A stretch of 64,000 nt of DNA, from positions 186,001 through 250,000 of the IMG/VR virus record IMGVR_UViG_3300045970_000794; one strand, given 5' to 3'. Below the pieces are notes generated by a model that did not search any database, was not told where the DNA came from, and was given only the letters and a program-made list of their open reading frames with translations. How positions within the stretch are numbered: the first letter of the stretch is position 1; each line of letters starts with the position of its first letter. The translations under genes were made by a program, and so were the position numbers. Shown here in pieces: positions 24,717 to 43,862 of the stretch.

Positions 24717-25946
24717 ATGAAAGAAAAAATTAAAGTTTTAGTACATCCTAGCGATAGGACAGGAGTTGGTTATTTCCGTTCAACAAGACCACATATTGCA
24801 TTAGAAGACATGTATCCAGATGATTTTCATGTTGATATTGATTATGACCCTAGATATGATGACGAAGAATTCTTAAAACAATATGATATAATTCATTATC
24901 ATAGAACATTTGGTCCATATGAACAAATGAGTGCTACAACCGAAACACTTAAAAGATTGGGAATTAAAGGTATTATGGATTTGGATGATTATTGGTCACC
25001 AGGTACTCACCACCCAGCTTATTTAATTATTAAACAAAATGGCTTAGATAAGAAATTAGTTGAAAATATTAAAGTAGCTGAATATGTGATGACAACAACC
25101 CCAATTTTTGCTAAAGAAATGAATAAATTTAATAAAAACACTTTAGTTATTCCTAATGCAATTGACCCATCCGAAAAACAATTTATTCATAACCCAGAAC
25201 CAAGTGAAAGAATTCGAATTGGTTGGTTAGGTGGTAGTAGTCACCTTAAAGATTTAGAAATACTTAAAGGTGTTGTTAGTCGATTGAAAAGTGAAGGTTT
25301 AATCGATAAGGTTCAATTTGTTTTATGTGGATTCGACACTAGAGGTACTATTACTTCAATTAATGAAGAAACAAAAGAACAATCAACTAGAAAAATTCTT
25401 CCTCATGAAAGTGTTTGGACTAAATATGAAGAAATATTCACAGATAACTATAGCACAATCAGCCCAGAATATAAAGCATTTTTATTGAAGTTTAGTAAAG
25501 ATGAATGGCCAGATGTTGCTAATGAAGCGTATAGACGTGTTTGGACGAAACCAATTAATACATATGCAAGTAATTACAATTTATTTGATATTAGTTTAGC
25601 TCCATTGGAAGAAAACATTTTCAATAAAGTTAAGAGTCAACTTAAAGTAATTGAAGCTGGTTTCCATAAAAAAGCTTTAATCGCTCAAAATTATGGACCA
25701 TATCAAGTTGATTGTATCGAAGCTTACGAACGTGGTGGTACTATTAACCCAAAAGGTAATGCATTTTTAATTGATTCAGTAAAAAACCATAAAGATTGGT
25801 TTGAACAATTAAAACGATTAATAAAAAACCCACAGCTAATTAATCAATTAGCAAATAATTTATATGATACAGTTAAAGATACATACTCATTAGAGTCTGT
25901 TACAAAACTAAGAGCTGAAACGTATAAAAAATTATTAGATAGATAA
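24717..25946 (+). CDS. GT-B glycosyltransferase
   Basis: GVGYFRS..P, MDLDD, RIGWLGGSSH..DL, DISLAPLEEN.FNKVKSQLKVIEAG. Confidence 0.8.
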   Translation: MKEKIKVLVHPSDRTGVGYFRSTRPHIALEDMYPDDFHVDIDYDPRYDDEEFLKQYDIIHYHRTFGPYEQMSATTETLKRLGIKGIMDLDDYWSPGTHHPAYLIIKQNGLDKKLVENIKVAEYVMTTTPIFAKEMNKFNKNTLVIPNAIDPSEKQFIHNPEPSERIRIGWLGGSSHLKDLEILKGVVSRLKSEGLIDKVQFVLCGFDTRGTITSINEETKEQSTRKILPHESVWTKYEEIFTDNYSTISPEYKAFLLKFSKDEWPDVANEAYRRVWTKPINTYASNYNLFDISLAPLEENIFNKVKSQLKVIEAGFHKKALIAQNYGPYQVDCIEAYERGGTINPKGNAFLIDSVKNHKDWFEQLKRLIKNPQLINQLANNLYDTVKDTYSLESVTKLRAETYKKLLDR

Positions 25947-25947
25947 T

Positions 25948-26519
25948 ATGAAATTATTTAAAAAAAGTAAAAAAGAAACAATTAAAATTAATGTTAATAA
26001 AATTAAGTTAATTAATAAAAAAATTGAGCAAATGGGAAAACCAAAGTAGTCGCTCAAGTTAAGCCAAATATTTTTAAAAGAATTTATGGTGAAATTAAAA
26101 ACATTTTTAAACGTAAATTTGTAAAAGTTCCAGTAACTAAATTTAAAATTGATACTAAGTTAGTTAAACCTTTTGGACATGAAGCACTAGCTAGTGAAAG
26201 GATTAATGAATTAATCCAATGGGCACCACCACAAACAATGACTTATGATGAGGATTTGTATAATGAAGAATTGATGAAATCAGCTTATGAGAATTCTTGT
26301 GGTAAAGGGTCACCAAGATTTGTTGATTTTGTTGATATTGATGAACATAATTGGTTGAATAAGAATAATACTGATGAAAGTAAATCAATACAAAATTTAA
26401 TTAGTCAAGATATTAAAGAAACTAATATGGAACTCGCTTTACAAAATAAAAAATTGAATCGTAAACCACCATTATTAATTCATAAAAAAACACAGGTTAA
26501 AAATCAAATATTTGAATAA
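25948..26519 (+). other. Two-frame ORF joined by a -1 shift at G GGA AAA (programmed frameshift, pseudogene or indel error)
   Basis: Frame 0 runs ATG 25948 to TAG 26049; the -1 frame is open from 26040 into ORF 26238..26519. Confidence 0.45.
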
Positions 26520-26533
26520 AAGATTAAAATATC

Positions 26534-26564
26534 TTGACACTTGGTAATTTTTTGAGTATCTTTG
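26534..26564 (+). promoter_or_regulatory. Bacteroidota-type promoter
   Basis: TTG at 26534 and TATCTTTG at 26557-26564, upstream of 26593. Confidence 0.65.
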
Positions 26565-26592
26565 GTTAAAATATTAATTAACTCAAAAAAAT

Positions 26593-27159
26593 ATGAATCT
26601 ATCACAAGAAAAAATAACCAAAAACGCCAAAAAGTTCTTCCAAACTGGTCAAGAATATGGCTTTATGCCTGAAAGTCTAGTGACTTTCTTAGGTACTGAA
26701 ATAATAGCAGCACCAGCTTCTACTAGAAAAGATATGCATAATGCATTCGAAGGTGGTTTAATTGACCACACTCTTAAAGTTACTAGTTATGCTGTTAAAT
26801 TAAATGATATTTTACCAGAAGCTAAAAAAATTGATAAAGCATCATTAGTTAAAGTTTGTTGCCTTCACCAAATAGGTAAAGCTAAATTATACAAAATATG
26901 CGAGTCTCAATGGCATAGAGATAACCAAGGTAAAATGTATGATTTTAATGATGACATGATATCAATGAAAGTTGGTGAAAGGTCTGCATTATATGCATTA
27001 CAACATGGTGTTGAATTAACCGAGGAAGAATTTTCCGCTATTGTGTTTCATGATAGAGATGAAAGTGACGCTCAAGTTAAATGGCATAATTCAATGTTAG
27101 GTGAAATATTGAAAATGGCTAATATATTGGCAATTAGAGAAGAAAAAATAATGCAGTAG
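26593..27159 (+). CDS. HD-superfamily protein (YhaM-like) with HQ in place of HD
   Basis: APAS..HNAFEGGLIDHTL..LHQIGK..AIVFHD. Confidence 0.7.
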   Translation: MNLSQEKITKNAKKFFQTGQEYGFMPESLVTFLGTEIIAAPASTRKDMHNAFEGGLIDHTLKVTSYAVKLNDILPEAKKIDKASLVKVCCLHQIGKAKLYKICESQWHRDNQGKMYDFNDDMISMKVGERSALYALQHGVELTEEEFSAIVFHDRDESDAQVKWHNSMLGEILKMANILAIREEKIMQ

Positions 27160-27197
27160 ACTTTAGTTTTTTCCAAAAAATCATATATTTATAATAT

Positions 27198-28130
27198 ATG
27201 GGTCGAAAGAAAAAATACGATGAAATTGAAAAAATAGACCAACAACGAAAATGGTCTAATAAATATTATAATAAAAAAAATAAATTTTATGTATATGTTT
27301 ATTTAGACCCACGAAAAGTTGGTCCATTTTATTATGGTGAATATATGTTTAATTATGAACCAATATATATTGGTAAAGGTAAGGGATATAGATATAAGAT
27401 TCACTTAAAAATGGCTGAAAATAATATAGATGATAAAACTTTTAAATTTTATAAAATTAAATCAATATTAAATGATGGGCTCACCCCTATTGTTTTTAAA
27501 TTAATTGAAAATATTACTGAAAATAGAGCTCTAGAATATGAGAAACAACTAATTAAACTTATAGGTCGTTATGATAATAATAGTGGACCATTGACAAACT
27601 TAACTGATGGTGGTGACGGTATTTCTGGTTATAAACAAAAAGAAAATTATTTAATAACTAGACGTAGAAAAATTAATCAATTTGATTTAGATGGTAAATT
27701 AGTGAAAACTTGGAATTCAATAATAGATGCTAAAACTAGTTTAAATATTAAGGCACCAATATCAGATTCATGTAAAGGTAAACGATTAATTATTGGTGGT
27801 TATATTTGGAAATATTTTGATGAAAATTATAATTCTCAAGATATTTTAAACTTAATTCAAAATCAAATTGAAAAAGAATTCACCATTAGGCAAATTAATG
27901 GTAAAAAAAATAGTCAGTTAATATTTGAAATTAATTTAAATGGTGAAATTATTAAAGAATGGGATTCAGCTAGTAGTGCTGCTAGATTTTATGGGGTTAA
28001 TAAAACTGCAATATGTAATGCTATAACAAAAAAAAGGTTATGTAATAATAAAATTTGGTGTAAAAAAGAAAAATATAGTATAAGTGAAATTTCAACAATT
28101 GTTGAAAAATATAAATTAAAAAAAAAATAA
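27198..28130 (+). CDS. GIY-YIG homing endonuclease with NUMOD1-like repeats
   Basis: YVYVYLDPR..PIYIGKG..RY..H..E..LTNLTDGGDG; INQFDLDGKLVKTWNS and FEINLNGEIIKEWDS. Confidence 0.8.
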   Translation: MGRKKKYDEIEKIDQQRKWSNKYYNKKNKFYVYVYLDPRKVGPFYYGEYMFNYEPIYIGKGKGYRYKIHLKMAENNIDDKTFKFYKIKSILNDGLTPIVFKLIENITENRALEYEKQLIKLIGRYDNNSGPLTNLTDGGDGISGYKQKENYLITRRRKINQFDLDGKLVKTWNSIIDAKTSLNIKAPISDSCKGKRLIIGGYIWKYFDENYNSQDILNLIQNQIEKEFTIRQINGKKNSQLIFEINLNGEIIKEWDSASSAARFYGVNKTAICNAITKKRLCNNKIWCKKEKYSISEISTIVEKYKLKKK

Positions 28131-28133
28131 AAA

Positions 28134-28736
28134 ATGAGTAATGAAGCTGATGAATTAAGAAAGTTATTTCTTTCTAAAGTAATTGAAGACCCATCTATTT
28201 TGACTGATGATGAAAAATTTAATGAAGTCTTAAATACATTAGATTCTGAAAGTGAACCTTCGATTAAATTTAATAACAATTTTTGTAAACTAGTTCTCAA
28301 ATGTGAGAATAAATCTACTAATGATAATCCAGAGTACCAAAAAGAAGGTGATTCTGGATTTGATTTGCGAGCTAATTTAACTGAACCCGTATGGATAAAC
28401 CCATTAGAACGTAAGCTAATACCAACTGGTTTATTTTTCGAAATACCATTAGGTTTCGAAATCCAAGTTAGACCTCGTTCTGGTTTAGCACTTAAAAATG
28501 GTATCACAGTATTAAACACACCTGGTACCATAGATTCTGGATATCGTGGTGAAGTCTGCATTATTCTTGTTAATTTAAGCGATACACCATTCTGCGTTAA
28601 TCATGGTGAAAGAATTGCTCAAGGAGTATTTGCCGCTGTAATTGGTAAACAATTGGTTAACATCGAAATGATTGATAAAGTTTCACCAGATACTGACAGA
28701 GGTGCTGGTGGATTCGGACATACTGGTTTGAGTTAA
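28134..28736 (+). CDS. dut: Trimeric dUTPase
   Basis: SGFDL, RPRSGLA, GTIDSGYRGE, RIAQ, RGAGGFGHTG. Confidence 0.95.
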   Translation: MSNEADELRKLFLSKVIEDPSILTDDEKFNEVLNTLDSESEPSIKFNNNFCKLVLKCENKSTNDNPEYQKEGDSGFDLRANLTEPVWINPLERKLIPTGLFFEIPLGFEIQVRPRSGLALKNGITVLNTPGTIDSGYRGEVCIILVNLSDTPFCVNHGERIAQGVFAAVIGKQLVNIEMIDKVSPDTDRGAGGFGHTGLS

Positions 28737-29043: not shown

Positions 29044-30690
29044 ATGATAAGTGTTTTTTACTGTACCCGAGCTTCAAATCCGAAGCATCTAGAACATCTA
29101 AAGAAAACCTGTGGGTTAAAAGATGTTGAAATAATTGAATACATTAACAATGGTGAAGGTTTGACCAAACCATATAATGACGCATTGAAATCTGCAAAAT
29201 ATGATATTGTAGTATTTCTGCATGACGATATTGAAATTCGTACCGATAATTGGGGGAATAAAATATTAAAACATTATAAACGTAATCCAGAGTACGGCAT
29301 ATTAGGTGTTGCTGGTACTAAATACCTTTCTACTACTGGTAAATGGTGGGATGATAAAAAGAAAATGTATGGTCAAGTTTTCCATACACATGAAGGTAAA
29401 ACTTGGTTATCAGCTTATAGTAAAGACCAAGGTAATCAACTAGAAGAAGTATGTTTAGTTGATGGACTATTTTTCTCTGTTTGTAAATCTAGACTTAAAC
29501 ATAATTTTGATGAATCCGTTACTGGTTTCCACTTTTATGATGTAACCTTCTGCGTTCCAAATTACTTATCTGGCGTTAAAATTGGTGTTCATACCGATAT
29601 TAAAGTTAATCACATGTCAATTGGTGTGACCAATGATGAATGGGAGCAAAATAGGGTTTTATTTGCCGCTGAAAATAAAGAGCATTTACCAATCAATATT
29701 AAAAAAATATATGGTAAGAATGATAAGATTAAAGTACTTATCGGGTGCCTTAATTTTAATAGTTATACTGGCTCTGAACTACATTTCTATGAATTAGCCA
29801 AAGAATTAATTAAACAAGGTTGTGAAGTTAGTATTTGTTCTAATTTAGCTGGTGGTGATTTGGCTAATAGAGCTAAAACATTGGGGATTAAATTATACAA
29901 TCTTAATGAGCCACCAGGATATAAACTTGGTGATGGTAAATGGATGCTTAAAACAGCACAAGGTGATGTAGCATCTAAAGAAAATACGTTATATTCTGTA
30001 ACACCAACCGATTTCGATATTCTTCATTTGAGCCATAAACCAATTGTTGAACATTTAATGAAGTTATACCCAGATGTTCCAGTAATATCAACAATTCATT
30101 CTGAGGTTATTGAATTGGAATATCCAGTAATTAATGATAGAATTAAAAAATACATTGCAATTCGCCCAGAAATTAAACAATTTTTGATTGACCGTTTTAA
30201 TATTGATGAATCCAAAATTGGTGTGATTTATAATCCAATTAATAATACTCGATTTAAACCAATTGTAACAAAGAAAAGAGATAAAAAACGTATTTTATTT
30301 GTTGGTACGATGGACTATTTAAGAGAAAACACCATTAATGACTTAATTAATGAAACAAGAATAAATGGCTCTGAATTATATTTGGTTGGTAAAAAGAATG
30401 GTTTAAATGTTGATTCATTGTTAATAGGTAATGACCATGTTAAATATTTCCCACCAGTATGGAATATTGAAAAATATATTCAAGATTGTGATGAAACTGC
30501 TGGTATATTGCTTGGTAGAACTACAATTGAATCATGGATGTGTGAAAAGCCAGCGTGGATATACGAAATTGACGAACAAGGGAATATTAAATCAAAAAGA
30601 TTAAACGAAGTACCAAGTGATATTGATAAATTCATTAGTAGAAATGTAGTTAATCAAACTATTGAAGAATATAAAAATATTATCTCTTAA
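29044..30690 (+). CDS. Two-domain glycosyltransferase (GT-A plus GT-B)
   Basis: VFLHDD..GVAG..VDGLF..FHFYD in first domain; YTGSELHFYELAKEL..GRTTIE in second. Confidence 0.8.
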   Translation: MISVFYCTRASNPKHLEHLKKTCGLKDVEIIEYINNGEGLTKPYNDALKSAKYDIVVFLHDDIEIRTDNWGNKILKHYKRNPEYGILGVAGTKYLSTTGKWWDDKKKMYGQVFHTHEGKTWLSAYSKDQGNQLEEVCLVDGLFFSVCKSRLKHNFDESVTGFHFYDVTFCVPNYLSGVKIGVHTDIKVNHMSIGVTNDEWEQNRVLFAAENKEHLPINIKKIYGKNDKIKVLIGCLNFNSYTGSELHFYELAKELIKQGCEVSICSNLAGGDLANRAKTLGIKLYNLNEPPGYKLGDGKWMLKTAQGDVASKENTLYSVTPTDFDILHLSHKPIVEHLMKLYPDVPVISTIHSEVIELEYPVINDRIKKYIAIRPEIKQFLIDRFNIDESKIGVIYNPINNTRFKPIVTKKRDKKRILFVGTMDYLRENTINDLINETRINGSELYLVGKKNGLNVDSLLIGNDHVKYFPPVWNIEKYIQDCDETAGILLGRTTIESWMCEKPAWIYEIDEQGNIKSKRLNEVPSDIDKFISRNVVNQTIEEYKNIIS

Positions 30691-30691
30691 T

Positions 30692-31573
30692 ATGGACTGG
30701 AAATATCCCGAAATACCTAAAACTATGCATTTTTACTGGGGATTAAATACCCCAGTATCATATTTACAAATGCTTACAATTAAAAGTTTTAGATTACTAA
30801 ACCCAGATTGGGTAATAAACCTATGGGTACCAATATCTCCATTTAAAGAAACTCATTCGTGGTCCACTAATGAACAGAAAGTAGAATATACTGGTCTTGA
30901 TTATTATGATGAAATGATTAAGTATGTTAACCATGTTTTTGTAACTGATTTTGAAAAAATTGGCTTTAGAAATGATGTGTCGGAAGTATATAAATCTGAT
31001 TTTATTAGATTATATATACTATACCATGAAGGTGGCTTTTGGAGTGATATTGATATTTTATACATCAAACCAATGTCTGAATTAAATTTAGACTCTGGTA
31101 TTATACAAGGGGGTTCTTATAGTTTGAATATGGGTGTTGTTTATAATGACCCAGTTGGATATATTGGTATTGGTTTTATGTTCTCAAAAGCTAAGAATAA
31201 ATATTTTGAAGCTTTATTAAATTCAGCACTAGAGAATCTAAATACGGCCCAATATGAATCTATTGGCGTTGGGTTATACCGTAAATTATTCCATTCAATA
31301 TATGCTATTCAACATAAATTTAAAGGAATTACTTTTGCAAACATACCAATGGATGTAGTATATCCATTCGAATGGCACCAAGTTGATAAAATTTTCAATA
31401 GTACTGAAGATTTAACAACCAACCGAACTATTGGTATTCACTGGTTTAATGGTGCTACTGATGCAAAGAATTTCCAAAATTTATTAACACCAAATAATTT
31501 AGATGAAATAATTCAATCAACCATTGTTAGATATGTTAAACAAATCAATAAAGAATGGAGTGAAATTAATTAA
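30692..31573 (+). CDS. DXD glycosyltransferase (GT32-like)
   Basis: IPKTMHFYW; SDFIRLYILYHEGGFWSDID. Confidence 0.85.
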   Translation: MDWKYPEIPKTMHFYWGLNTPVSYLQMLTIKSFRLLNPDWVINLWVPISPFKETHSWSTNEQKVEYTGLDYYDEMIKYVNHVFVTDFEKIGFRNDVSEVYKSDFIRLYILYHEGGFWSDIDILYIKPMSELNLDSGIIQGGSYSLNMGVVYNDPVGYIGIGFMFSKAKNKYFEALLNSALENLNTAQYESIGVGLYRKLFHSIYAIQHKFKGITFANIPMDVVYPFEWHQVDKIFNSTEDLTTNRTIGIHWFNGATDAKNFQNLLTPNNLDEIIQSTIVRYVKQINKEWSEIN

Positions 31574-31576: not shown

Positions 31577-32659
31577 ATGAAAACAGTAGTAACTATAACT
31601 GGTATTAGACCAGATTTTATTAGAATGTCAGAGATATTCAAAAAATTAGACGATAATTTTAATCATATTTTAATACATACTGGTCAGCATTATGATGCGC
31701 TATTGTCTGATGTATTTTTTAATGAATTAGAAATTAGGAAACCAGATTATAACTTAGAAATCGGTGGCCGTGGTAAAGAACATTTCCACCAATCAGCTGA
31801 TTTGTCGGTTAAAATTATTGAATTATTACGTAAAGAGGATATCAAACCAGATATTATTTTATTTCTTGGTGATTCTAATTCAGCAATGGCTGCTACCCCA
31901 TTAAAAAAAGAAGGTTATAAAATAGGTCATATTGAAGCTGGTATGCGGTCATATGATAAACGAATGTTAGAAGAAATAAATAGAGTGTGTTGTGACCATT
32001 GTAGTGATTTATTATTTGTTTATCATGATGACTATAAAAATAATTTATTAAAAGAAAATTTTGATTCAAAATCAATACATGTTGTTGGTAATACAATAGT
32101 CGAGGTTGCTATGAAATTCAATGATTTACTTAATACTAAATCAAAGACTAAAGATTTTATATTATTAGATATTCATCGGCCAGAAAACTTTAAACATCGT
32201 AGTAGGTTAGAAAATATTATAAAATATGCACAATATTTTTCAAATTTAACTGGATTACCAATTAAGTTATTAGGTTTTAAGCGTACTATGGATTATATTA
32301 CTGAGTTTAAAATTGATTTAACATCAATAGATTGTATTGAACTTATGTCATACAAAGATTTTATGCTAACGCAATATAATGCGGCATTTATGATTAGTGA
32401 TAGTGGAACTGCACAAGAAGAACCAGCATTGTTGAGGACTCCAGTATTAGTTCCTAGAGATTATACTGAAAGACCACAATCATATGCTAATAATTGTTCA
32501 CATTATTTAGATGTAAATGAATTCAAAATTGAAACATTAAAATTAGCTAATGATTGGCTAAAATCAATTTCAGATGGAAACTTAATTATGAAATCAGATT
32601 GGCTCGGTGATGGTAAAACATCGACCGACATAATTACAATTTTAAAACATTCAATATGA
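31577..32659 (+). CDS. wecB: UDP-N-acetylglucosamine 2-epimerase family
   Basis: GIRPDFIRM, HTGQHYD, GD, HIEAGMRS, EEINR, HRPEN, SDSGTAQEE, TERP. Confidence 0.9.
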   Translation: MKTVVTITGIRPDFIRMSEIFKKLDDNFNHILIHTGQHYDALLSDVFFNELEIRKPDYNLEIGGRGKEHFHQSADLSVKIIELLRKEDIKPDIILFLGDSNSAMAATPLKKEGYKIGHIEAGMRSYDKRMLEEINRVCCDHCSDLLFVYHDDYKNNLLKENFDSKSIHVVGNTIVEVAMKFNDLLNTKSKTKDFILLDIHRPENFKHRSRLENIIKYAQYFSNLTGLPIKLLGFKRTMDYITEFKIDLTSIDCIELMSYKDFMLTQYNAAFMISDSGTAQEEPALLRTPVLVPRDYTERPQSYANNCSHYLDVNEFKIETLKLANDWLKSISDGNLIMKSDWLGDGKTSTDIITILKHSI

Positions 32660-36994: not shown

Positions 36995-37940
36995 AGTTTT
37001 AGTTGTTGGTGGTGCTGGTTATATAGGCGGTTTAACTTCCGACTTATTATCATCTAAAGGTCACGATGTTACAGTATATGATAATTTATTGTATGAATCT
37101 AGATACCTTAAAAATGTTAAATTTGTTTATGGCGATATTCGTGAAACTGATAGAATAATTGAATTATCAAAATCTTTTGATGTAATTGTTTTAATGGCGG
37201 CATTAGTTGGTGACCCAGCGTGTAGTGTTGACCCACAACTTACTGAGGATATTAATTTTAAACCAATAAAAAAATTAGCTAATGGTATTCCATTGGGTAA
37301 ACATATAATATTCATGTCTACTTGCTCAGTGTATGGTGCCCAAGATACCCTATTAGATGAGTCTAGTTCAACGAACCCATTATCATCATATGCAAGTACC
37401 AAATTAAAGGCTGAAGAGTTTATAACGAAGCGTAATGGTACGATTTTTAGATTAGGTACTGTATTTGGTTTAGGTGATACATATAGTCGCATTAGAATGG
37501 ATTTAGTGGTTAATGTATTAGTAATGAAAGCACTAAAATATGGTGAGATAACAATTAATGGTGGTGAACAATGGAGACCAATTATTGCGGTGAAAGATAT
37601 TGCAAATTATATTTGTGAAGCTGTTGATTATCAATATAATGGTACATATATTTTAGCGTATGAAAACGTTATAATCAAAGAATTGGGTGTGAAAGTTGCA
37701 AGTTTAATTCCAAACACAAAAATTAATTACACTGATATTTCTTTCCAAGATGCTAGAAATTATCGAGTTAATAATAGTAAATCATTGGCAACGTTCAAAT
37801 ATAAACCTATTGTATCAGTTGAAGAAGAAGTTGGTAGGATGGTAAAAATGTTCAACGAACAACGAATTAAAAACCCAGAAGACATGATTTATAATAATGG
37901 TTCTTATTTAAGAGAATTAAAAAAAACAAACGAATTATAA
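36987..37940 (+). CDS. NAD-dependent nucleotide-sugar epimerase/dehydratase
   Basis: GGAGYIG, STCSVYG, YASTK. Confidence 0.9.
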   Translation: MSKVLVVGGAGYIGGLTSDLLSSKGHDVTVYDNLLYESRYLKNVKFVYGDIRETDRIIELSKSFDVIVLMAALVGDPACSVDPQLTEDINFKPIKKLANGIPLGKHIIFMSTCSVYGAQDTLLDESSSTNPLSSYASTKLKAEEFITKRNGTIFRLGTVFGLGDTYSRIRMDLVVNVLVMKALKYGEITINGGEQWRPIIAVKDIANYICEAVDYQYNGTYILAYENVIIKELGVKVASLIPNTKINYTDISFQDARNYRVNNSKSLATFKYKPIVSVEEEVGRMVKMFNEQRIKNPEDMIYNNGSYLRELKKTNEL

Positions 37941-37941: not shown

Positions 37942-38544
37942 ATGAATATTGATAAAAGTTTCTGGGAGAGTAAACACTCTGATAGTGATAGATATTGGTT
38001 AACTGGTTCAAGTTTAAGAGATATTATGCATTTACATAATCTAACTATTGATGATATTAAAAATAAAAAAATGTTAGAAATTGGGGTTGGATTTGGTAAC
38101 CTATCGATAGATGCTGTGAATCACGTAAAAGAATTAATTTGTTGTGATATATCTGAAGTAGCATTAACGAAAGTTCATCCTTTAGTAACTAAAAAATATT
38201 TAACAACTGAACTTTCAAAAATTGAACCAGTTGATTTAGCTGTTTGTCATTTAGTGTTTCAACATTGTATTGATTCTGAGATTGAGAGGATAATCAATGA
38301 TGTTGTATTGAGTGATGATGGAATATTTTCATTTCAATTCGCATTTTTACGTGAAAATGAAGAACCAAATGAAAATGTTAAAAATTTAATTAATGGTGGT
38401 TCACATCATTTCAGAAGTATTGAAACTATTACTGATATGGTTAATAAAGCAAATAAAGAGATTATATCAATTTCGGAACCAATGAATTATTATAATCCAG
38501 AAAATTTTAGCTGGTTAATGATTAAAATTAAAAACAAAAAATAA
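37942..38544 (+). CDS. Class I SAM methyltransferase
   Basis: MLEIGVGFG; CDIS; VFQH. Confidence 0.8.
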   Translation: MNIDKSFWESKHSDSDRYWLTGSSLRDIMHLHNLTIDDIKNKKMLEIGVGFGNLSIDAVNHVKELICCDISEVALTKVHPLVTKKYLTTELSKIEPVDLAVCHLVFQHCIDSEIERIINDVVLSDDGIFSFQFAFLRENEEPNENVKNLINGGSHHFRSIETITDMVNKANKEIISISEPMNYYNPENFSWLMIKIKNKK

Positions 38545-38999
38545 TGGAAAAAGATATTAAATTATACAAAGGTGACATTGCGGTTGATGACCGAGGTTCA
38601 CTATCATTCGTAAATGACTTCAATTTTGAAGGTGTTAAACGATTCTATCAAGTAGAAAATCATAGAGCTGGTTTCATTCGTGCATGGCATGGTCATATAA
38701 AAGAGGGTAAATACGTATATGTTACTGAAGGTAGTATATTAATTGCGGTATTACCAATTACAATTGAGGGTGATAAAGCAGTTTGTGATGAAACAAAGAT
38801 TAAATCTTTCACATTATCAGCTAAGAAACCAAGTATTTTATGGATTCCAGCTGGTTATGCAAATGGATTTAAAACATTAACACCTAACACTAAAGTTATA
38901 TTCTTCTCAACATCAACACTAGAAGAAAGTAATGGTGATGATTATAGATTTGAAAGTAATAAATTTGGTAATAACATTTGGGAAGAAAATTTTAGATAA
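38544..38999 (+). CDS. rmlC: dTDP-4-dehydrorhamnose 3,5-epimerase-like cupin
   Basis: DDRG, IRAWHGH, WIPAGYANGF. Confidence 0.75.
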   Translation: MEKDIKLYKGDIAVDDRGSLSFVNDFNFEGVKRFYQVENHRAGFIRAWHGHIKEGKYVYVTEGSILIAVLPITIEGDKAVCDETKIKSFTLSAKKPSILWIPAGYANGFKTLTPNTKVIFFSTSTLEESNGDDYRFESNKFGNNIWEENFR

Positions 39000-39000
39000 T

Positions 39001-39837
39001 ATGAAAATATATGTTTTTGGTGCAACAGGTATGCTAGGTGAATATGTAACAACATATTTATCTGAATTTTATGATGTAATTATTATTAATAGGGATATGA
39101 TTGATGCTAGCTCAATAACTGAACGTCAATTGAGTGCTAAATTATTTCATTTAGGTGTTAAAAAAAATGATGTAATAATTAATTGTATGGGAACGATTAA
39201 ACCTAGAGTTGATGAGCTTGGCCCATTAAATGCTATTCTGGTTAACTCAGTATTCCCAAGAATTTTGGCGAATGCTTGCCAATCATTAGAAGCTAAAATG
39301 ATTCACCCAACTACTGATTGTGTTTTCACTGGTAATGATGGTGATTATACTGAAGATTCAATTCATGATGTAACAGATACTTATGGACGTACTAAATCAT
39401 TAGGTGAACCAGAAAATTGCACAGTTATTCGAACATCTATAATTGGTGAGGAAGTCAGTCAAGGTCGTTCATTAGTTGAATGGATTAAATCTTGTAAAGA
39501 TAAGGAAGCTAATGGTTATAATAATCATTATTGGAATGGAATGACATGTTTGCAATTTGCAAAAGTATGTCACATAATAATAGACGAGAATTTATTTTGG
39601 AATGGTGTTAAACATATTCATTCTAATTATGTTGATAAATGTAATTTATTAAAAATGGTTAGTGATGTGTATAAATTAAATATTAAAGTTAATGAAATAT
39701 CAGGTCCTACTAGTTGTGACCGAACATTGAAAAGTATTAGTATTGAACCTCAATTTAATATTCCAGAGTTGTACACACAAATTGTTGATATGAAAAATTT
39801 CTCAAAAAAACTATATGAAAATTATGAGTTGGATTAA
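39001..39837 (+). CDS. rmlD: dTDP-4-dehydrorhamnose reductase-like SDR
   Basis: GATGMLG, TTDCVF, YGRTK..GE, RTS. Confidence 0.8.
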   Translation: MKIYVFGATGMLGEYVTTYLSEFYDVIIINRDMIDASSITERQLSAKLFHLGVKKNDVIINCMGTIKPRVDELGPLNAILVNSVFPRILANACQSLEAKMIHPTTDCVFTGNDGDYTEDSIHDVTDTYGRTKSLGEPENCTVIRTSIIGEEVSQGRSLVEWIKSCKDKEANGYNNHYWNGMTCLQFAKVCHIIIDENLFWNGVKHIHSNYVDKCNLLKMVSDVYKLNIKVNEISGPTSCDRTLKSISIEPQFNIPELYTQIVDMKNFSKKLYENYELD

Positions 39838-40669
39838 AAATAAAATAGCAATACTATCATTAGCAATGTCTAATGTTGAAAAAAACGCATTAACGCAAGA
39901 AGGTACTACACTTTCTGATGATACACAACACATACAACGCCATAGGCAAGGTATGTTATCAGATGACCTTATGCAAGGTAGAGTTACTGAAGAAGTTAAA
40001 CTACTTAGGCACCGTATGTATAAAATATTGGATGAATCATCAAAATTAAAAGTTCATTTTAAAAAAGATTCTAATGGTAATTTAACATACGATTTGGTTG
40101 ATAAAACAATCATCCCATCGAAATTAGTAATTGACCCTTTTGATGATTATAAAGTTGAATTAGTTATTGATAATTCACCAATAACTGGTGGTATGGACTT
40201 AACATCGGAACATCCAGATGAAACTATTGTTGAAAGACAAGTGTATTGCAGTCGTGGTATCACACCTAAATTTGAGATTGAGAAATATTGTACTAAATTA
40301 TTTGTTAGGTACATTAAAAATGATGAGCGATTGTTAGAATTCCACATACCAAAATATGTTGATAATTACGACCGAAAAACAGTTTTCTTAATTAGTGAAA
40401 TTAAAAAATTAATTGAAAAAACTAGATATTCAGATATATTAGATATAAAAACTGTTGGCTTCGTAACATTCAACGCTATCGGGGCTCAAGATTTCCGTGA
40501 ATTTACGTATGATGTTGATAAATTTGATAAAATAGTTGAATTTGATGGTGTTTATATTATTAAATTCAAAGCCACAGTAATCGCCAATGGTGATAATATC
40601 ATCGACAAATACAAACATGAATTGCAAGATGAGCGATATGCAAATAAAGAAGCTAGAATAGTTAAATAA
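39815..40669 (+). CDS. Hypothetical protein
   Basis: 284-aa ORF. Confidence 0.6.
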   Translation: MKIMSWIKNKIAILSLAMSNVEKNALTQEGTTLSDDTQHIQRHRQGMLSDDLMQGRVTEEVKLLRHRMYKILDESSKLKVHFKKDSNGNLTYDLVDKTIIPSKLVIDPFDDYKVELVIDNSPITGGMDLTSEHPDETIVERQVYCSRGITPKFEIEKYCTKLFVRYIKNDERLLEFHIPKYVDNYDRKTVFLISEIKKLIEKTRYSDILDIKTVGFVTFNAIGAQDFREFTYDVDKFDKIVEFDGVYIIKFKATVIANGDNIIDKYKHELQDERYANKEARIVK

Positions 40670-40671: not shown

Positions 40672-40896
40672 TTATCGTTTCTTACGCACACTACCCGATT
40701 TTTTACTTTTTTTAATATTAACCTCTTTATTAGCTACTTTAACGATAACTTTTGGTTTATCATCAACTTCTATTGGTGCTAATCCATTTAATTTACGATA
40801 AGTTATAATTAGTGATTTAATTTCAGATTCAGTCAAACCAGTAATCTCAACTGGATATATATCGTGAAAAACTTTACTCCCAAGACCATTACTCAT
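40672..40896 (-). CDS. Small protein with basic C-terminus
   Basis: MSNGLG...KKSKKSGSVRKKR; ATATTTAT upstream at 40916-40923. Confidence 0.5.
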   Translation of the reverse strand: MSNGLGSKVFHDIYPVEITGLTESEIKSLIITYRKLNGLAPIEVDDKPKVIVKVANKEVNIKKSKKSGSVRKKR

Positions 40897-40982
40897 ATGT
40901 TTAAGTTTATTTATTATAAATATCTTCAAATTTATCAATAATTAATATTTACTTTAACTATAATTATGATTATTTTAATATT

Positions 40983-41582
40983 ATGAAAATAGGTATTGAA
41001 TTAAATGAAGTGTTACGTGATTTCATCGGCCAATTCGAATATGTGTATAATAAGTATTTAAACGCAGAGTTAGATACTCAACAAAATCCAGTCAAATCAT
41101 TTGACTTAGTGGATTATTTTACATTTTCTGGTGGTACTGATGAAATGAATATGTTTCTTTATGAAGAAGCGGCACTCGAGGTTTTTGGTCATGCAGATGA
41201 ACTGTATACTAATTTAATTAATCGTTTAAATATTTTTTTAATGGATATTAAAGACGATGAAGAACATGAAATTTGGTTAGTTAGTAGAGAGGCTGTGAAT
41301 AGTATTCCAGCAACTTTCTTTTTCTTATCCAAAACAGGTGCCAGATTTGATAGAATCAAATTTGTGCAAAAATACTCTGACGAGTGGGATGATATTGATG
41401 TATTAGTAACCGCAAACCCTAGAGTATTAGATTGTAAACCAGATGGTAAAATTGCTGTTAAAGTGAAAGCTAGTTACAACGATGATTCAATCTCCGATTA
41501 CCAAATAAAATCCTTATTTGAATTCATTGATAATGATGAATTAAGGGATAAAATTTTTAAAAAACTAAAAGAAAATGAATAG
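40983..41582 (+). CDS. HAD/5'(3')-deoxyribonucleotidase-like protein with non-canonical motif I
   Basis: KIGIELNEVLRD (canonical IxIDxDGVL); C-terminal YN..I. Confidence 0.6.
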   Translation: MKIGIELNEVLRDFIGQFEYVYNKYLNAELDTQQNPVKSFDLVDYFTFSGGTDEMNMFLYEEAALEVFGHADELYTNLINRLNIFLMDIKDDEEHEIWLVSREAVNSIPATFFFLSKTGARFDRIKFVQKYSDEWDDIDVLVTANPRVLDCKPDGKIAVKVKASYNDDSISDYQIKSLFEFIDNDELRDKIFKKLKENE

Positions 41583-41946
41583 TGTTGATTATTTGGAAAT
41601 TGGTGGAGTAGCGTATTCACTAGATTTCGATTCATTCGAATCATTGTTAAGCCTTGATATAACAAAAGAAAATGAAGAACCAGTTGAAATTGAAACAACA
41701 ACTGAGTTCGATGGTACTGGAAACCCAGTCGGGTCATCAATTATGACAAGGCAAATTAGACGTGGTAAAGAAATTGATATGTCTAAATATGAAGTCATCA
41801 AACATATGTTAGAAATTGTATTAGGTTACAATGAAGAACTTGATGATAGTTTAGGAATACAACGAGCATTTGATAAGCTCCCAATAAGTTTTAAAATTGC
41901 CTTCAATACTTTAGTAAAGTATGGTGTTTTAAATGAAATAAAATAA
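41575..41946 (+). CDS. Hypothetical protein
   Basis: 123-aa ORF in operon. Confidence 0.6.
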   Translation: MNSVDYLEIGGVAYSLDFDSFESLLSLDITKENEEPVEIETTTEFDGTGNPVGSSIMTRQIRRGKEIDMSKYEVIKHMLEIVLGYNEELDDSLGIQRAFDKLPISFKIAFNTLVKYGVLNEIK

Positions 41947-41968
41947 AAATGTTTTAATAAAAATTAGA

Positions 41969-43045
41969 ATGGAAAACAATGAATTAAGTAGCCACATAAA
42001 AGCGGTAATTGAAAAACTAGATGCAAAAGATTTTGGGTTTTATTTTTTCACATTAGATACTAAAGGTAACCCAACGGCTGGTGTTGCTAATATCTACGAA
42101 CATGTGAAAATTCTCACAGAATTAGGGTATAAAGCATACATTATGCATGAAAAAAATGAATACATCGGTGTTGGTGGTTGGTTAGGTGAAGAGTATATGA
42201 AATTACCACACGTATCAATTGAAAATCAAACATTGAATGTTGGTCCACAAGACTTCATCATAATACCAGAAGTATTTGCAAATGTTATGGACCAAACTAA
42301 AAACTTTCCTTCAAAAAGAATCGTTTTATGTCAATCATATGACTATATTTTTGAATTAATGAATTTTGGTTTAACATGGGGTGTATTCGGAATTAATGAT
42401 GTTATTACTACTAGTCAAAAACAGGCTAGCTACATCAAAACATTATTCCCAAATATTAACACACATATTATTCCAGTATCAATACCAGAATATTTTAAAC
42501 CACAAGAAAAGCCAGTGAAACCAGTGATTTCAATCATGGCCAGAGACCAAAAAGATGCGTTGAAAATTATCAAATCATTCTATATTCAATATCCAACATA
42601 TAAGTGGATTACATTTAAAGAATTAAGAGGTGTACCAAAAGAAGAGTTCGCTAGTTCTTTAGCTGATTCATGTTTAGCTGTTTGGGTTGATGGTATTTCT
42701 GGTTTCGGAACATTCCCATTGGAAGCAATTGAATGTAATGTACCTGTGATTGGTAAAATCCCAGAATTGGTTCCAGAGTGGATGGAAGATAATGTAACAC
42801 CAGAAGGTATTACTAATCTAAAAGCTAATGGTGTTTGGAGTACTAGTATATTAGAAATACCACATTTGATTGCACAATACCTTAAAGTTTGGTTAGAAGA
42901 TTCAGTACCTGAGAATATTTTAGATGCAATGAAAGAAAGCAAAGGTCAATACACGTATGAAAAACAAAAATTAGCTGTTGAACAAATTTACACTGATTTT
43001 GTTAATAAACGTAAAGAAGAGATAATGTTATTACAAAATAAATAA
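41969..43045 (+). CDS. GT-B glycosyltransferase-like protein
   Basis: AGVANIYEH..L; IIIPE; GFGTFPLEAIECNVPVIG. Confidence 0.7.
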   Translation: MENNELSSHIKAVIEKLDAKDFGFYFFTLDTKGNPTAGVANIYEHVKILTELGYKAYIMHEKNEYIGVGGWLGEEYMKLPHVSIENQTLNVGPQDFIIIPEVFANVMDQTKNFPSKRIVLCQSYDYIFELMNFGLTWGVFGINDVITTSQKQASYIKTLFPNINTHIIPVSIPEYFKPQEKPVKPVISIMARDQKDALKIIKSFYIQYPTYKWITFKELRGVPKEEFASSLADSCLAVWVDGISGFGTFPLEAIECNVPVIGKIPELVPEWMEDNVTPEGITNLKANGVWSTSILEIPHLIAQYLKVWLEDSVPENILDAMKESKGQYTYEKQKLAVEQIYTDFVNKRKEEIMLLQNK

Positions 43046-43049
43046 AAAT

Positions 43050-43862
43050 ATGAAAGAAATGAATGGAATTACGGTTATTCTTCCAGTATACGAAGTTAAC
43101 CAAGAAATTGAACAATATTTTGCTTTGGCGATTGCTAGTATTAATAATCAAGCAATATTACCAGATGAATTATTAATTGTTACTTCTTCAAATGAAGAAC
43201 TTAAAACATTTGTTAATGGTTTTGATTATGGTACAATTAAAGAAAATGTTAGAATTATCGAAAATACTGGTAATACTGACTTCCCTAGTCAATTCAATTT
43301 TGGTGTTGAAAATGCTAAAACTGAATGGGTATCATTCCTTGAGGTAGATGATGAATTCTCTAGAATTTGGATTAAAAATGTTATCACCTATCGTGAAGCT
43401 TATCCAGAAATCAACACATTCTTACCTATAATCGTAGATGTTGATGCTGAAGGTCAATTCATCGGTTTAACTAACGAACCTGTATGGGCTGCTGAGTTTT
43501 GTGATGAATTAGGTATATTAGACCATCAAGCATTGATTGGTTACCAAAACTTCAATTTTGCTGGTATGGTTATTCGCAAAAGTGTTATTGAGGAATTTTA
43601 CGGTATGAAATCAAACTTGAAATTAACGTTTATGTACGAATTTTTATTAAGGTTGACACATTTTGATACAAAAATCATGGTAATACCTAAAATCGGATAT
43701 AAACACACAAATCAAAGAGTTAATAGTTTGTTTTATAACTATAAACAAGAAATGAAACCTAATGAAGGAAAATGGTGGTTAGCTCAAGCTAAAAAAGAGT
43801 TCTATTTCACACACGATAACAGAGGCTTAACCTATACTGAGCCAGCTGAAAAAGAAGTATAA
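43050..43862 (+). CDS. GT2-like glycosyltransferase
   Basis: ITVILPVY; NFGV..EWVSFLEVDD. Confidence 0.7.
   Translation: MKEMNGITVILPVYEVNQEIEQYFALAIASINNQAILPDELLIVTSSNEELKTFVNGFDYGTIKENVRIIENTGNTDFPSQFNFGVENAKTEWVSFLEVDDEFSRIWIKNVITYREAYPEINTFLPIIVDVDAEGQFIGLTNEPVWAAEFCDELGILDHQALIGYQNFNFAGMVIRKSVIEEFYGMKSNLKLTFMYEFLLRLTHFDTKIMVIPKIGYKHTNQRVNSLFYNYKQEMKPNEGKWWLAQAKKEFYFTHDNRGLTYTEPAEKEV

What the first reader, a model, noticed from the sequence alone, without database searches (positions are those of the whole stretch)
24717..43862. Large phage glycan-building region
Nine glycosyltransferase-like genes, a UDP-GlcNAc 2-epimerase, an SDR epimerase, RmlC/RmlD-like enzymes and three methyltransferases. 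No flippase, polymerase or nucleotidyltransferase is visible, which argues against a surface-polysaccharide export locus. It favours cytoplasmic glycosylation of virion proteins or DNA with methylated sugars. The tightly overlapping block 30692-39837 looks like an exchangeable module.
Basis: partly seen in the sequence, partly recalled or inferred. Interest (0 to 1): 0.6.

Follow-up and report, generated by a model that had tools for sequence, protein, structure and literature searches.

The report
Swappable glycan cassette in jumbo phage
A 362-kb uncultured water phage carries four conserved sugar-adding enzymes that frame a block of sugar-tailoring genes which related phages swap like bacterial serotype genes, but what the sugar coats (most likely phage particle proteins) is not yet shown.

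Summary
Window 24717-43862 carries nine glycosyltransferase-like genes (seven firm, two weak). It also has a WecB-type UDP-GlcNAc 2-epimerase, an SDR, a cupin/reductase pair of RmlC/RmlD type and three SAM methyltransferases. Every GT2, GT1 and SDR hit in the complete 362,102-bp phage genome lies in this locus. No sugar nucleotidyltransferase, Wzx/Wzy/WecA-type membrane protein or transmembrane segment is found.

More than 500 IMG/VR stretches encode relatives of the right-hand frame glycosyltransferase. In all relatives examined a frame is conserved: GT-B 24717, GT-A+GT-B fusion 29044, Agt-like GT-B 41969 and GT2 43050. The block between (30662-39837) is replaced, shortened or lengthened, spanning 7-20 kb, by other glycan genes such as fucosyltransferases, aminotransferases and acetyl- or formyltransferases. 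So "exchangeable module" is well supported.

DNA glycosylation is disfavoured, because ThyA and Dut are ordinary and no hydroxymethylase or TET was found. A virion or phage-protein acceptor is the best reading. The reasons are core-gene status, soluble enzymes, YadA-like fibre genes next door, and kinship of one frame enzyme to Agt, which extends glycans on adhesins in the cytoplasm. This is inference only. Remodelling of the host envelope remains a serious rival. It is a new variant of a known kind, the polymorphic glycan clusters of large phages.

The parts
24717..25946 (+). Frame glycosyltransferase 1: GT-B (GT4-like), 409 aa. It is the most conserved gene of the region.
   Evidence: phrog_7162 at 1.9e-42. 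AF2 model with Foldseek match to PglA/BshA/MshA at E 2e-12. It is 52-68% identical in 15 of 15 relatives with enough flank. In relative L007 it carries an in-frame LAGLIDADG intein.
26593..28736 (+). Non-glycan insert within the span: HD-domain protein (26593-27159), GIY-YIG/NUMOD1 homing endonuclease (27198-28130) and dUTPase (28134-28736).
   Evidence: Pfam. Dut passes the NF001862 cut-off at 172.7 against 103 bits. HD and Dut are conserved and adjacent in relatives, which lack the endonuclease.
29044..30690 (+). Frame glycosyltransferase 2: bifunctional GT-A (Glyco_tranf_2_5, residues 14-209) plus GT-B (Glyco_transf_4, from residue 242). It marks the left border of the variable cassette.
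   Evidence: Pfam. It is 49-67% identical in 18 viral loci. It has no match in cultured-phage records or PDB.
30662..31573 (+). Cassette: GT32-like DXD glycosyltransferase.
   Evidence: Gly_transf_sug at 8.4e-9. Present in only 1 of 24 surveyed relatives.
31577..32659 (+). Cassette: non-hydrolysing UDP-GlcNAc 2-epimerase (WecB type), which supplies UDP-ManNAc.
   Evidence: Epimerase_2 at 1.1e-65; TIGR00236 at 2e-59.
32656..34956 (+). Cassette: GT2 (32656-33468), GT2_4-like (33450-34262) and a weak GT2-like ORF (34147-34956). They travel with WecB as one sub-module.
   Evidence: Pfam. The genes are found together at 44-74% identity in L108 and L110-L112.
34946..36080 (+). Cassette: two SAM methyltransferases, Methyltransf_24 and FkbM family.
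   Evidence: TIGR01444 at 60.4 against 37.7 bits.
36077..36994 (+). Cassette: GT-B C-terminal-domain glycosyltransferase (GT1/GT4-like), a borderline hit.
   Evidence: Glycos_transf_1 at 25 bits. Homologues at 43-62% identity in L108, L110, L126 and L189.
36981..37940 (+). Cassette: extended SDR of 4-epimerase/C4-dehydrogenase type. It has the YxxxK motif and reads S-T-C-S where 4,6-dehydratases have T-D-E.
   Evidence: The best solved relative is 6vo6 at 3.3e-35. More than 7,500 homologues were found. The best are 67-75% identical, and every context inspected is this same phage locus.
37942..38544 (+). Cassette: class I SAM methyltransferase lying between the SDR and the cupin.
   Evidence: Methyltransf_12/25/11. 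Found in 0 of 24 surveyed relatives.
38544..39837 (+). Cassette: RmlC-like cupin (NDP-4-keto-sugar 3,5-epimerase type) and RmlD-like 4-reductase.
   Evidence: Pfam 2e-11 and 7e-18. PDB RmlC at 7e-5 and RmlD 2ggs at 1.6e-10. They always follow the SDR in L108-L112, L126 and L189.
39815..40669 (+). Conserved 284-aa protein of unknown fold that 'floats'. It sits to the right of the cassette here but directly after the GT fusion in L004, L006, L007 and L108.
   Evidence: No Pfam, PHROG, PDB or Atlas signal. Present in 18 of 24 relatives.
40983..41946 (+). Two conserved small frame proteins: a 199-aa HAD-fold protein without a conserved nucleophile Asp, and a 123-aa protein of unknown function.
   Evidence: AF2 pLDDT 83.8; the Foldseek HAD hits are weak at TM 0.4-0.5. 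The motif I position reads E/D/T/S across relatives. The 199-aa protein is present in 24 of 24 and the 123-aa protein in 16 of 24 relatives.
41969..43045 (+). Frame glycosyltransferase 3: retaining GT-B of the Agt/AmGGT family.
   Evidence: Profile against PDB 8xsg at E 2.7e-13, residues 42-343 of 352. 8xsg is AmGGT. Its Agt homologues extend peptide-linked glucose (PMC12159676). At least 510 related stretches occur in IMG/VR.
43050..43862 (+). Frame glycosyltransferase 4: GT2.
   Evidence: Glycos_transf_2 at 1.2e-11. Present in 23 of 24 relatives at 46-57% identity.
43873..44667 (+). Context: conserved sigma-70 region-2-like protein immediately downstream.
   Evidence: Weak Pfam hit at 6e-4. 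Present in 23 of 24 relatives.
9882..21870 (-). Context and candidate acceptors: a bank of six fibre or virion genes, divergently placed next to the locus. Serine plus threonine content is 17-27%.
   Evidence: YadA_head repeats in three of them and a Peptidase_S74 chaperone domain in 19912-21870. PHROG tail-fibre and virion hits. Composition.

Best explanation
The locus is a soluble, cytoplasmic glycan assembly line of an abundant family of uncultured aquatic jumbo phages, and it is built in two tiers.

Tier 1 is a conserved frame of four glycosyltransferases: GT-B 24717, the GT-A+GT-B fusion 29044, the Agt-like GT-B 41969 and GT2 43050. Small conserved proteins accompany them. The frame is present in every family member examined and presumably starts and extends a core glycan on a conserved acceptor.

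Tier 2 is a cassette (30662-39837) that relatives exchange by recombination and that sets the outer, variable part. In this phage the cassette does three things:
- It converts host UDP-GlcNAc to UDP-ManNAc (WecB).
- It re-configures a second host NDP-sugar through C4 oxidation, 3,5-epimerisation and C4 reduction (SDR, cupin, reductase). No 4,6-dehydration step is encoded.
- It adds the sugars with five cassette transferases, and three SAM methyltransferases O-methylate them.

NDP-sugar activation is left to the host.

Shown: gene content, solubility, frame-versus-cassette conservation, and the exchange.

Inferred: the acceptor is a phage-encoded protein exposed on the virion. The YadA-like fibres encoded next door or the capsid are the likeliest candidates. 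The result would be serotype-like surface diversity.
For: - Gene content.
- All glycan genes of the genome are in this one locus.
- No TM segments, and no initiating, flipping, polymerising or ligating membrane proteins anywhere in the genome.
- Frame conservation: the 409-aa GT is in 15 of 15 relatives. The right-hand frame genes are in 23-24 of 24, at 46-63% identity.
- The cassette span varies between 7.3 and 20.4 kb.
- Cassette content is unrelated in relatives with close backbones. One has GT25, GT11 x2, GT10, a GMD-like SDR, a HAD+NTP-transferase fusion and FkbM. Another has GT2, GT11, GT10, DegT and an SDR.
- Only 2 of 24 relatives share the window's SDR-cupin-reductase module.
- Cassette genes are 59-71% identical to L110, whose backbone is only 35-45% identical.
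- L111 and L112 are 95% identical at nucleotide level up to a point where an acetyltransferase gene is replaced by a formyltransferase gene.

For a phage-protein acceptor:
- Four GTs are core genes and are more conserved than their neighbours.
- One carries an intein at its invariant GGS|SH motif in a relative. Inteins typically sit in conserved sites of proteins the element cannot do without (general knowledge).
- The nearest characterised kin of 41969 are Agt enzymes, which extend glucose on adhesin glycopeptides in the cytoplasm (PMC5303269 and PMC4550697, listed).
- YadA-head-repeat fibre genes abut the locus.
Against: - No glycosylated protein has been observed.
- No initiating protein glycosyltransferase of a known type is present; GT41/NGT is absent.
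- N-X-S/T sequons are enriched in only one of six fibre proteins (z 3.7) and not in the others.
- Soluble GTs also build lipid-linked glycans on the cytoplasmic face of the membrane, so the lack of TM segments does not exclude a host Und-PP-linked acceptor.
- Gene timing is unknown. The promoter scan was uninformative, with 114 sites against 143 expected.
- The host is unknown.
- The identity of 6vo6 as the C. jejuni C4-dehydrogenase Cj1427 is from my memory. I could not confirm it in the held papers.
Confidence: 0.45

Rival explanations
1. Host-envelope remodelling. The soluble phage GTs act at the inner face of the membrane on host lipid-linked intermediates (O-antigen, capsule, or the general O-glycan of Bacteroidota). 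Host flippase and ligase then export the altered glycan. This changes the infected cell's surface to block superinfection or to stop progeny adsorbing to debris.
For: - This is the published reading of the polymorphic glycan clusters of P-SSM2 and other jumbo cyanophages (PMC1079782; PMC7824862).
- UDP-ManNAc is a classic precursor of lipid-linked envelope glycans (general knowledge).
- The weak nearest NCBIfam neighbours of several GTs are EPS, LPS or teichuronic-acid enzymes.
- Cassette diversity looks like O-antigen locus diversity.
Against: - No phosphoglycosyl-transferase, flippase, polymerase, ligase or ABC-2 exporter exists in the whole genome.
- Four GTs are strictly conserved core genes across a family that must meet different host glycans. 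Accessory host-modifying genes are usually sporadic.
- No integrase or lysogeny signal was looked for or seen in the window, so a long-lived infected state is unsupported.
Confidence: 0.3
2. Free or small-molecule glycoside. The enzymes make a cytoplasmic oligosaccharide, polysaccharide or glycosylated metabolite that is not attached to protein, lipid carrier or DNA. Examples would be a storage or compatible solute, or a decoy.
For: - AmGGT, the solved relative of 41969, uses free oligosaccharides and not glycopeptides.
- The bifunctional GT-A+GT-B fusion could polymerise.
- Methylated cytoplasmic polysaccharide synthesis uses similar GT-B enzymes; the methylmannose polysaccharide transferase 7qsg is among the fold hits.
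Against: - There is no precedent in phages.
- Serotype-like cassette turnover is hard to explain for an internal product.
- Nine GTs is a large investment for an internal product.
Confidence: 0.08
3. DNA hypermodification. The GTs glycosylate modified bases in phage DNA to evade restriction, as in the T-even phages or the MT-TET-GT systems.
For: - A conserved GT-B lies next to HD and dUTPase genes.
- Homologues of the 409-aa GT occur in Campylobacter and Phapecoctavirus phages.
- A C5-cytosine methyltransferase exists in the genome.
- Phage GTs are known to put diverse glycans on 5hmC (preprint 10.1101/2023.12.21.572611, listed).
Against: - The single thymidylate-synthase homologue passes ThyA equivalog cut-offs (394.9 against 327 bits) and has the dUMP-type Asn.
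- Dut is a true dUTPase.
- No Tet_JBP hit was found, although the control for that search was silent.
- The methyltransferase is 87 kb away with only 76-116-aa neighbours.
- Nine GTs, sugar epimerases and O-methyltransferases far exceed any known DNA glycosylation system.
Confidence: 0.04
4. Artefact: a bacterial polysaccharide locus mis-assembled into, or recently captured by, a phage contig.
For: Only the bacterial flavour of the enzymes supports this.
Against: - GC and codon use match the genome.
- The locus has the same position between fibre genes and the sigma-like gene in dozens of independent viral contigs from many samples.
- Bacterial genomes held only homologues of the SDR at 39% identity or less.
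Confidence: 0.01

Closest known systems
Polymorphic 'LPS/capsular polysaccharide' gene clusters of T4-like and jumbo cyanophages (P-SSM2 type; Sullivan 2005, PMC1079782; Iyer et al. 2021, PMC7824862)
   Same: - Many paralogous GTs of several families together with NDP-sugar epimerases and O-methyltransferases in a lytic large phage.
- Content differs even between related phages.
- No export machinery.
- The target has not been determined experimentally.
   Different: - There is no sequence kinship. The GT fusion has no hit in 50,697 phage records. The SDR hits Synechococcus phages at only 27-29%.
- Here the variable genes sit as one cassette between four strictly conserved frame GTs.
- This genome lacks the sugar kinases and nucleotidyltransferases described for cyanophage clusters.
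Clade-specific fibril glycosylation clusters of Megavirinae giant viruses (PMC10117803)
   Same: - Virus-encoded, host-independent cytoplasmic GTs plus pathways for rare bacterial-type sugars.
- Cluster content differs by clade.
- The product decorates virion surface fibrils.
   Different: - Those are eukaryotic viruses.
- Their glycans and protein targets have been demonstrated chemically; here nothing has been measured.
- No shared genes were tested.
Mycobacteriophage virion O-glycosylation (Freeman et al. 2023, as summarised in PMC12619734)
   Same: Phage-encoded soluble GTs modify capsid and tail-tube subunits in the cytoplasm.
   Different: - Those systems are small.
- No conserved-frame/variable-cassette design or sugar-nucleotide tailoring pathway is known to me for them (memory; the paper is not held).
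NGT/Agt cytoplasmic N-glycosylation of autotransporter adhesins (Actinobacillus, Kingella, Haemophilus; PMC5303269, PMC4550697, PMC12159676)
   Same: - 41969-43045 belongs to the Agt/AmGGT GT-B family (E 2.7e-13, full length).
- Substrates there are adhesins with YadA-type architecture, and YadA-head-repeat fibres are encoded next to the phage locus.
   Different: - No NGT/HMW1C (GT41) initiator is present in the phage.
- The solved relative itself prefers free oligosaccharides.
- The phage system has eight further GTs.
C. jejuni capsular heptose pathway Cj1427/Cj1430/Cj1428 (PMC10680097)
   Same: - The order of chemistry matches the gene trio SDR, cupin, reductase: C4 oxidation without dehydration, then C3/C5 epimerisation, then C4 reduction.
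- The SDR's best solved relative is 6vo6 (3.3e-35), and it lacks dehydratase residues.
   Different: - That 6vo6 is Cj1427 is from memory.
- The cupin and reductase match RmlC/RmlD structures, and only weakly.
- No GDP-heptose supply genes are present.
- The substrate is unknown.
Moraphages, freshwater jumbo phages with four core glycosyltransferase orthogroups (PMC12619734)
   Same: Aquatic uncultured jumbo phages with a family-B DNA polymerase and four GT families among the core genes.
   Different: - Membership was not testable because the sequences are not at hand.
- Their genomes reach only 307 kb.
- This genome has no HSP70.
- That paper does not describe a cassette.

Membership tests
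Wzx/Wzy- or ABC-transporter-dependent surface polysaccharide locus | Initiating phosphoglycosyltransferase (WecA/WbaP type, polytopic) | tested here: not met
   No locus protein has a TM segment. The only multi-TM ORFs in the genome are an ABC-importer permease and a cation-efflux protein.
Wzx/Wzy- or ABC-transporter-dependent surface polysaccharide locus | Flippase, polymerase, ligase or ABC-2 exporter | tested here: not met
   A genome-wide hydropathy scan found no ORF with 8 or more hydrophobic segments. This is family-agnostic but crude.
Wzx/Wzy- or ABC-transporter-dependent surface polysaccharide locus | Clustered GTs and NDP-sugar pathway genes with serotype-like variation | tested here: met
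Phage polymorphic glycan clusters (P-SSM2 type) | Several GT families plus sugar-modifying enzymes in a large lytic phage, differing between relatives | tested here: met
   Description of the kind in PMC7824862.
Phage polymorphic glycan clusters (P-SSM2 type) | Own sugar kinase or nucleotidyltransferase for NDP-sugar supply | tested here: not met
   PF00483 is absent from the genome. A relative (G005) does carry a HAD+NTP_transferase fusion.
Phage polymorphic glycan clusters (P-SSM2 type) | Sequence homology to the cyanophage clusters | tested here: not met
Virion protein glycosylation systems (mycobacteriophages, giant viruses) | Virus-encoded soluble GTs | tested here: met
Virion protein glycosylation systems (mycobacteriophages, giant viruses) | Glycan covalently bound to a structural protein | not testable with these tools
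   This needs virions or co-expression followed by mass spectrometry.
DNA glycosylation (T-even hmC glucosylation; MT-TET-GT systems) | Pathway to a hydroxymethylated base: dCMP/dUMP hydroxymethylase, or C5-MT plus TET/JBP next to the GT | tested here: not met
   - The only thymidylate-synthase homologue is a true ThyA.
- The C5-MT is distant and has no dioxygenase neighbour.
- The Tet_JBP search found nothing, but its control was silent, so that item alone is inconclusive.
NGT/Agt cytoplasmic N-glycosylation | Agt-family GT-B | tested here: met
   Profile A2 against 8xsg at E 2.7e-13.
NGT/Agt cytoplasmic N-glycosylation | HMW1C/NGT (GT41) initiating enzyme | tested here: not met
   PF13844 is absent.
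dTDP-L-rhamnose pathway (RmlABCD) | RmlA nucleotidyltransferase and RmlB 4,6-dehydratase | tested here: not met
   No NTP_transferase is present. There are only two SDRs in the genome. The 319-aa one reads S-T-C-S at the dehydratase T-D-E position, and the other is the RmlD-like reductase.
dTDP-L-rhamnose pathway (RmlABCD) | RmlC and RmlD at equivalog level | tested here: not met
   TIGR01221 scores 29.8 against 155.75 bits and TIGR01214 scores 52.9 against 224 bits. They are family-level relatives only.

The most novel reading that the evidence does not exclude
An abundant, uncultured family of aquatic jumbo phages glycosylates its own virion with a two-tier system. The fibres, built from YadA-like repeats, are the likeliest target. 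Four core glycosyltransferases lay a conserved inner glycan. A recombining cassette writes a strain-specific outer glycan containing ManNAc, methylated L-sugars, fucose, or N-acetyl or N-formyl amino sugars. This would give phages 'serotypes', analogous to bacterial O-antigens and to giant-virus fibril glycans. The glycan itself might take part in host recognition or in evading host or grazer recognition.
Probability: 0.35. Interest if true: 0.75.

Novelty: new variant of a known kind. Interest (0 to 1): 0.55.

Why it matters
Large phages have been known since 2005 to carry big, polymorphic glycan gene clusters, but what they glycosylate is still an open question. This family offers a clean handle on it.

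- The frame enzymes are core genes, so they should have a conserved and findable acceptor.
- The cassette varies like a serotype locus.
- Relatives number in the hundreds to thousands in public metagenomes.

If the acceptor is the virion, phage surface glycans would become a variable trait that could shape host range, adsorption and particle fate in lakes and oceans. The cassettes would also be a source of soluble enzymes for rare methylated and L-configured sugars.

If the acceptor is the host envelope, the locus would show a lytic jumbo phage rewriting the cell surface with no export genes of its own.

Tried and rejected
- The megablast of 29000-44000 and the tblastn of the GT fusion against cultured phages found nothing.
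- The genome-contig scan with the SDR gave only distant bacterial homologues, at 39% identity or less.
- Profile-profile comparison of the two GT-B frame enzymes showed no detectable relation.
- The 284-aa protein 39815-40669 had no signal in Pfam (even at E 1), PHROGs, NCBIfam, the PDB profile search or the ESM Atlas, whose model has pLDDT 0.34.
- The 466-aa downstream protein gave only a sub-threshold CBM96 lead.
- There are no repeats flanking the cassette that could mark recombination sites. All repeats found are AT-rich, chance-level matches.
- The sigma-70 promoter scan found fewer sites than expected by chance.
- Rfam found nothing in the window and no group I intron in L007.
- N-X-S/T sequon enrichment was tested as a sign of NGT-type glycosylation. 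Only one fibre protein stands out, probably because of its repeat motif.
- Moraphage membership could not be tested. HSP70 is absent.
- The paper searches for 8XSG and Cj1427 succeeded. The search for 6VO6 did not, so the Cj1427 identity of 6vo6 stays a recollection.
No read-level coverage, expression or microdiversity check was made, and read laying was not used.
- Complex prediction and the large representative search were not used.

Full report
**Setting.** The window is bases 186001-250000 of a 362,102-bp IMG/VR virus record with direct terminal repeats, rated 100% complete. The genome is 30.1% G+C. Upstream of the finding, on the minus strand, lie six fibre or virion genes (9882-21870). 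They carry PHROG tail-fibre hits, YadA-head repeats and a Peptidase_S74 chaperone domain. Further upstream is a 1467-aa family-B DNA polymerase. The finding itself lies on the plus strand, in a long co-oriented run of genes from 21903 to about 52959.

**Checking the observation.**
- Two ORFs without Pfam hits are also glycosyltransferases.
  - The 409-aa protein 24717-25946 folds with pLDDT 82.7 into a GT-B enzyme like PglA, BshA, MshA and PimA.
  - A profile of 41969-43045 matches PDB 8xsg over its full length at E 2.7e-13.
- With the weak hits 36077-36994 and 34147-34956, the count of nine stands.
- All GT2, GT1 and Epimerase-family hits of the whole genome fall inside window 29119-43439, so the clustering is not chance.
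There is no NTP_transferase and no large polytopic membrane protein. No hydrophobic segment occurs in any locus protein.
- Two corrections apply.
  - 26238-28736 is unrelated to glycans. It holds an HD protein, a GIY-YIG homing endonuclease and a dUTPase that passes its equivalog cut-off.
  - The gap-free block runs to 40669.

**Comparative anatomy.** Scans of IMG/VR and of public assemblies returned many relatives. At least 510 stretches encode a relative of the GT-B 41969-43045.
- The 409-aa GT, the HD protein, Dut and the GT-A+GT-B fusion 29044-30690 form a left anchor.
- The 199-aa and 123-aa proteins, the GT-B, the GT2 43050-43862 and a sigma-like gene form a right anchor.
- The 409-aa GT is present in 15 of 15 relatives with enough flank, at 52-68% identity.
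- In 24 relatives with at least 8 kb upstream of the right anchor, the right-hand frame genes (199-aa protein, GT-B, GT2 and sigma-like gene) are present in 23-24 of 24, at 46-63% identity. The window's cassette genes appear in 0-4 of 24, and the SDR-cupin-reductase module in only 2.
- The distance between the anchors ranges from 7.3 to 20.4 kb.
- The intervening genes are still glycan genes, but different ones.
  - One relative has GT25, two GT11, a GT10, a GMD-like SDR, a HAD+nucleotidyltransferase fusion and FkbM.
  - Another has GT2, GT11, GT10, a DegT aminotransferase and another SDR.
  - Others have WecB, a DegT aminotransferase and an acetyltransferase.
- Cassette and backbone histories disagree. 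L110 shares the WecB and SDR modules at 59-71% identity although its frame genes are only 35-45% identical. Backbones at 58-68% identity carry unrelated cassettes.
- At fine scale, L111 and L112 are 95% identical in DNA up to the exact place where a 441-bp acetyltransferase gene is replaced by a 791-bp formyltransferase gene.
Its borders coincide with the end of the GT fusion and the end of the reductase gene.
- The conserved 284-aa gene 39815-40669 floats. It lies to the right of the cassette here, and to the left in L004, L006, L007 and L108.

**Chemistry that can be read from the genes.**
- WecB makes UDP-ManNAc from UDP-GlcNAc (family knowledge).
- The SDR 36981-37940 has YxxxK but reads S-T-C-S where 4,6-dehydratases carry T-D-E (with textbook SDR motifs).
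- Its best solved relative is 6vo6 at 3.3e-35. I recall this as Cj1427, the C. jejuni GDP-heptose C4-dehydrogenase, but could not verify that.
- In that pathway a C4-dehydrogenase, a C3/C5-epimerase and a C4-reductase re-configure a sugar without deoxygenation (PMC10680097). This is the same order as the phage trio SDR, cupin, reductase.
- The cupin and the reductase reach only family-level similarity to RmlC and RmlD.
- With no RmlA or RmlB in the genome, L-rhamnose is possible only if the host supplies the 4-keto-6-deoxy intermediate.
- Three SAM methyltransferases, one of them FkbM-type, fit O-methylation of sugars.
- The SDR has more than 7,500 homologues. The best are 67-75% identical, and all five contexts inspected are this same phage locus. 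Bacterial genomes held only distant homologues.

**Which acceptor?**
- DNA is disfavoured.
  - The one thymidylate-synthase homologue passes ThyA equivalog cut-offs and keeps the dUMP-type Asn.
  - No TET/JBP hit appeared (control silent).
  - The lone C5-methyltransferase is 87 kb away among small ORFs.
- Contamination is excluded by composition and by recurrent synteny.
- Between virion protein and host envelope, the evidence is indirect.
- For a phage-encoded acceptor:
  - The four frame GTs are core genes, more conserved than their neighbours, across a family that must face varied host surfaces.
  - In relative L007 the 409-aa GT carries an in-frame LAGLIDADG intein exactly at its invariant GGS|SH motif, and a second endonuclease insertion near its start.
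  - The characterised kin of 41969-43045 are the Agt enzymes. They extend glucose on adhesin glycopeptides in the cytoplasm (PMC12159676; PMC5303269 and PMC4550697).
  - YadA-like fibre genes sit next door.
- Against it:
  - No known initiating protein GT is present.
  - There is no general sequon signal.
  - Soluble GTs also serve lipid-linked pathways.
- The published reading of comparable cyanophage clusters is host-surface change against superinfection.
- I put the virion or phage-protein reading at about 0.45 and the envelope reading at about 0.3.

**Comparison and novelty.** Polymorphic glycan clusters in large phages are known (PMC1079782, PMC7824862). So are clade-specific virion glycan clusters in giant viruses (PMC10117803). 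A recent paper on freshwater 'moraphages' lists four core GT orthogroups without analysing them (PMC12619734). Whether this phage belongs to that lineage could not be tested, and it lacks HSP70. Three things are new here:
- the explicit two-tier design of conserved frame and recombining cassette;
- its scale in public data;
- the Agt kinship next to YadA-like fibres.

I rate it a new variant of a known kind.

**Limits.**
- The host is unknown.
- Gene timing is unknown.

Noticed in passing
L007:4900-8273 (IMGVR_UViG_3300042502_001233, a 362,018-bp relative): The homologue of the 409-aa GT-B is invaded twice. An in-frame intein of about 364 aa with LAGLIDADG motifs sits between the invariant GGS and SH residues. 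A NUMOD3 endonuclease gene is inserted near codon 19, with the N-terminal coding stretch duplicated on both sides. No Rfam group I intron was found.
   Followed up: partly
window 27198-28130: A GIY-YIG/NUMOD1 homing endonuclease gene lies between the HD and dUTPase genes. These two genes are directly adjacent in the relatives, so this is a recent mobile insertion.
   Followed up: partly
window 9882-21870 (- strand): A bank of six fibre or virion genes. Three have 2-7 YadA-head repeats and one has a Peptidase_S74 intramolecular chaperone. 15968-18115 has 25 N-X-S/T sequons against 13.4 expected (z 3.7).
   Followed up: partly
window 40983-41582: A conserved 199-aa protein models as a HAD-like fold, but the motif I nucleophile position reads E, D, T or S across relatives. 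It is possibly a non-catalytic HAD-like protein.
   Followed up: partly
window 48337-49737: A 466-aa protein, 51-60% identical in relatives, has only viral look-alikes and a sub-threshold CBM96 (carbohydrate-binding module) similarity at residues 129-197.
   Followed up: partly
L005:1599-2637: The small low-complexity protein 23052-23390 of the window has four tandem homologous copies in relative L005.
   Followed up: no
window 23399-24067: A WYL-domain protein with a long Pro/Lys/Glu-rich C-terminal tail lies among five small conserved genes between the fibres and the first GT.
   Followed up: no
window 28970-28992: A G+C-rich hairpin followed by a T run (terminator-like on both strands) lies in the 308-bp gap between dUTPase and the GT fusion. 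This suggests the glycan operon starts a new transcription unit.
   Followed up: no
window 33450-34956: ORF 34147-34956 overlaps the preceding gene by 116 nt, so its real start is probably further downstream. Similarly, 38932 overlaps 38999 by 68 nt.
   Followed up: no
L108:12290-13045, L110:12227-12958 and the contig: Several relatives carry a PhoH gene at the right edge of the cassette, where the window has the 284-aa gene.
   Followed up: no
genome C1:281630-282619, 310645-311562, 316718-317614, 259684-260625 (outside the window): The phage encodes an ABC-importer permease (BPD_transp_1), a cation-efflux protein, a C5-cytosine DNA methyltransferase, and a ThyA with an insertion of about 50 aa.
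   Followed up: partly
window 2903-7306 (- strand): The DNA polymerase ORF is 1467 aa, but only residues 130-625 or so match phage family-B polymerases. The rest is unexplained.
   Followed up: no
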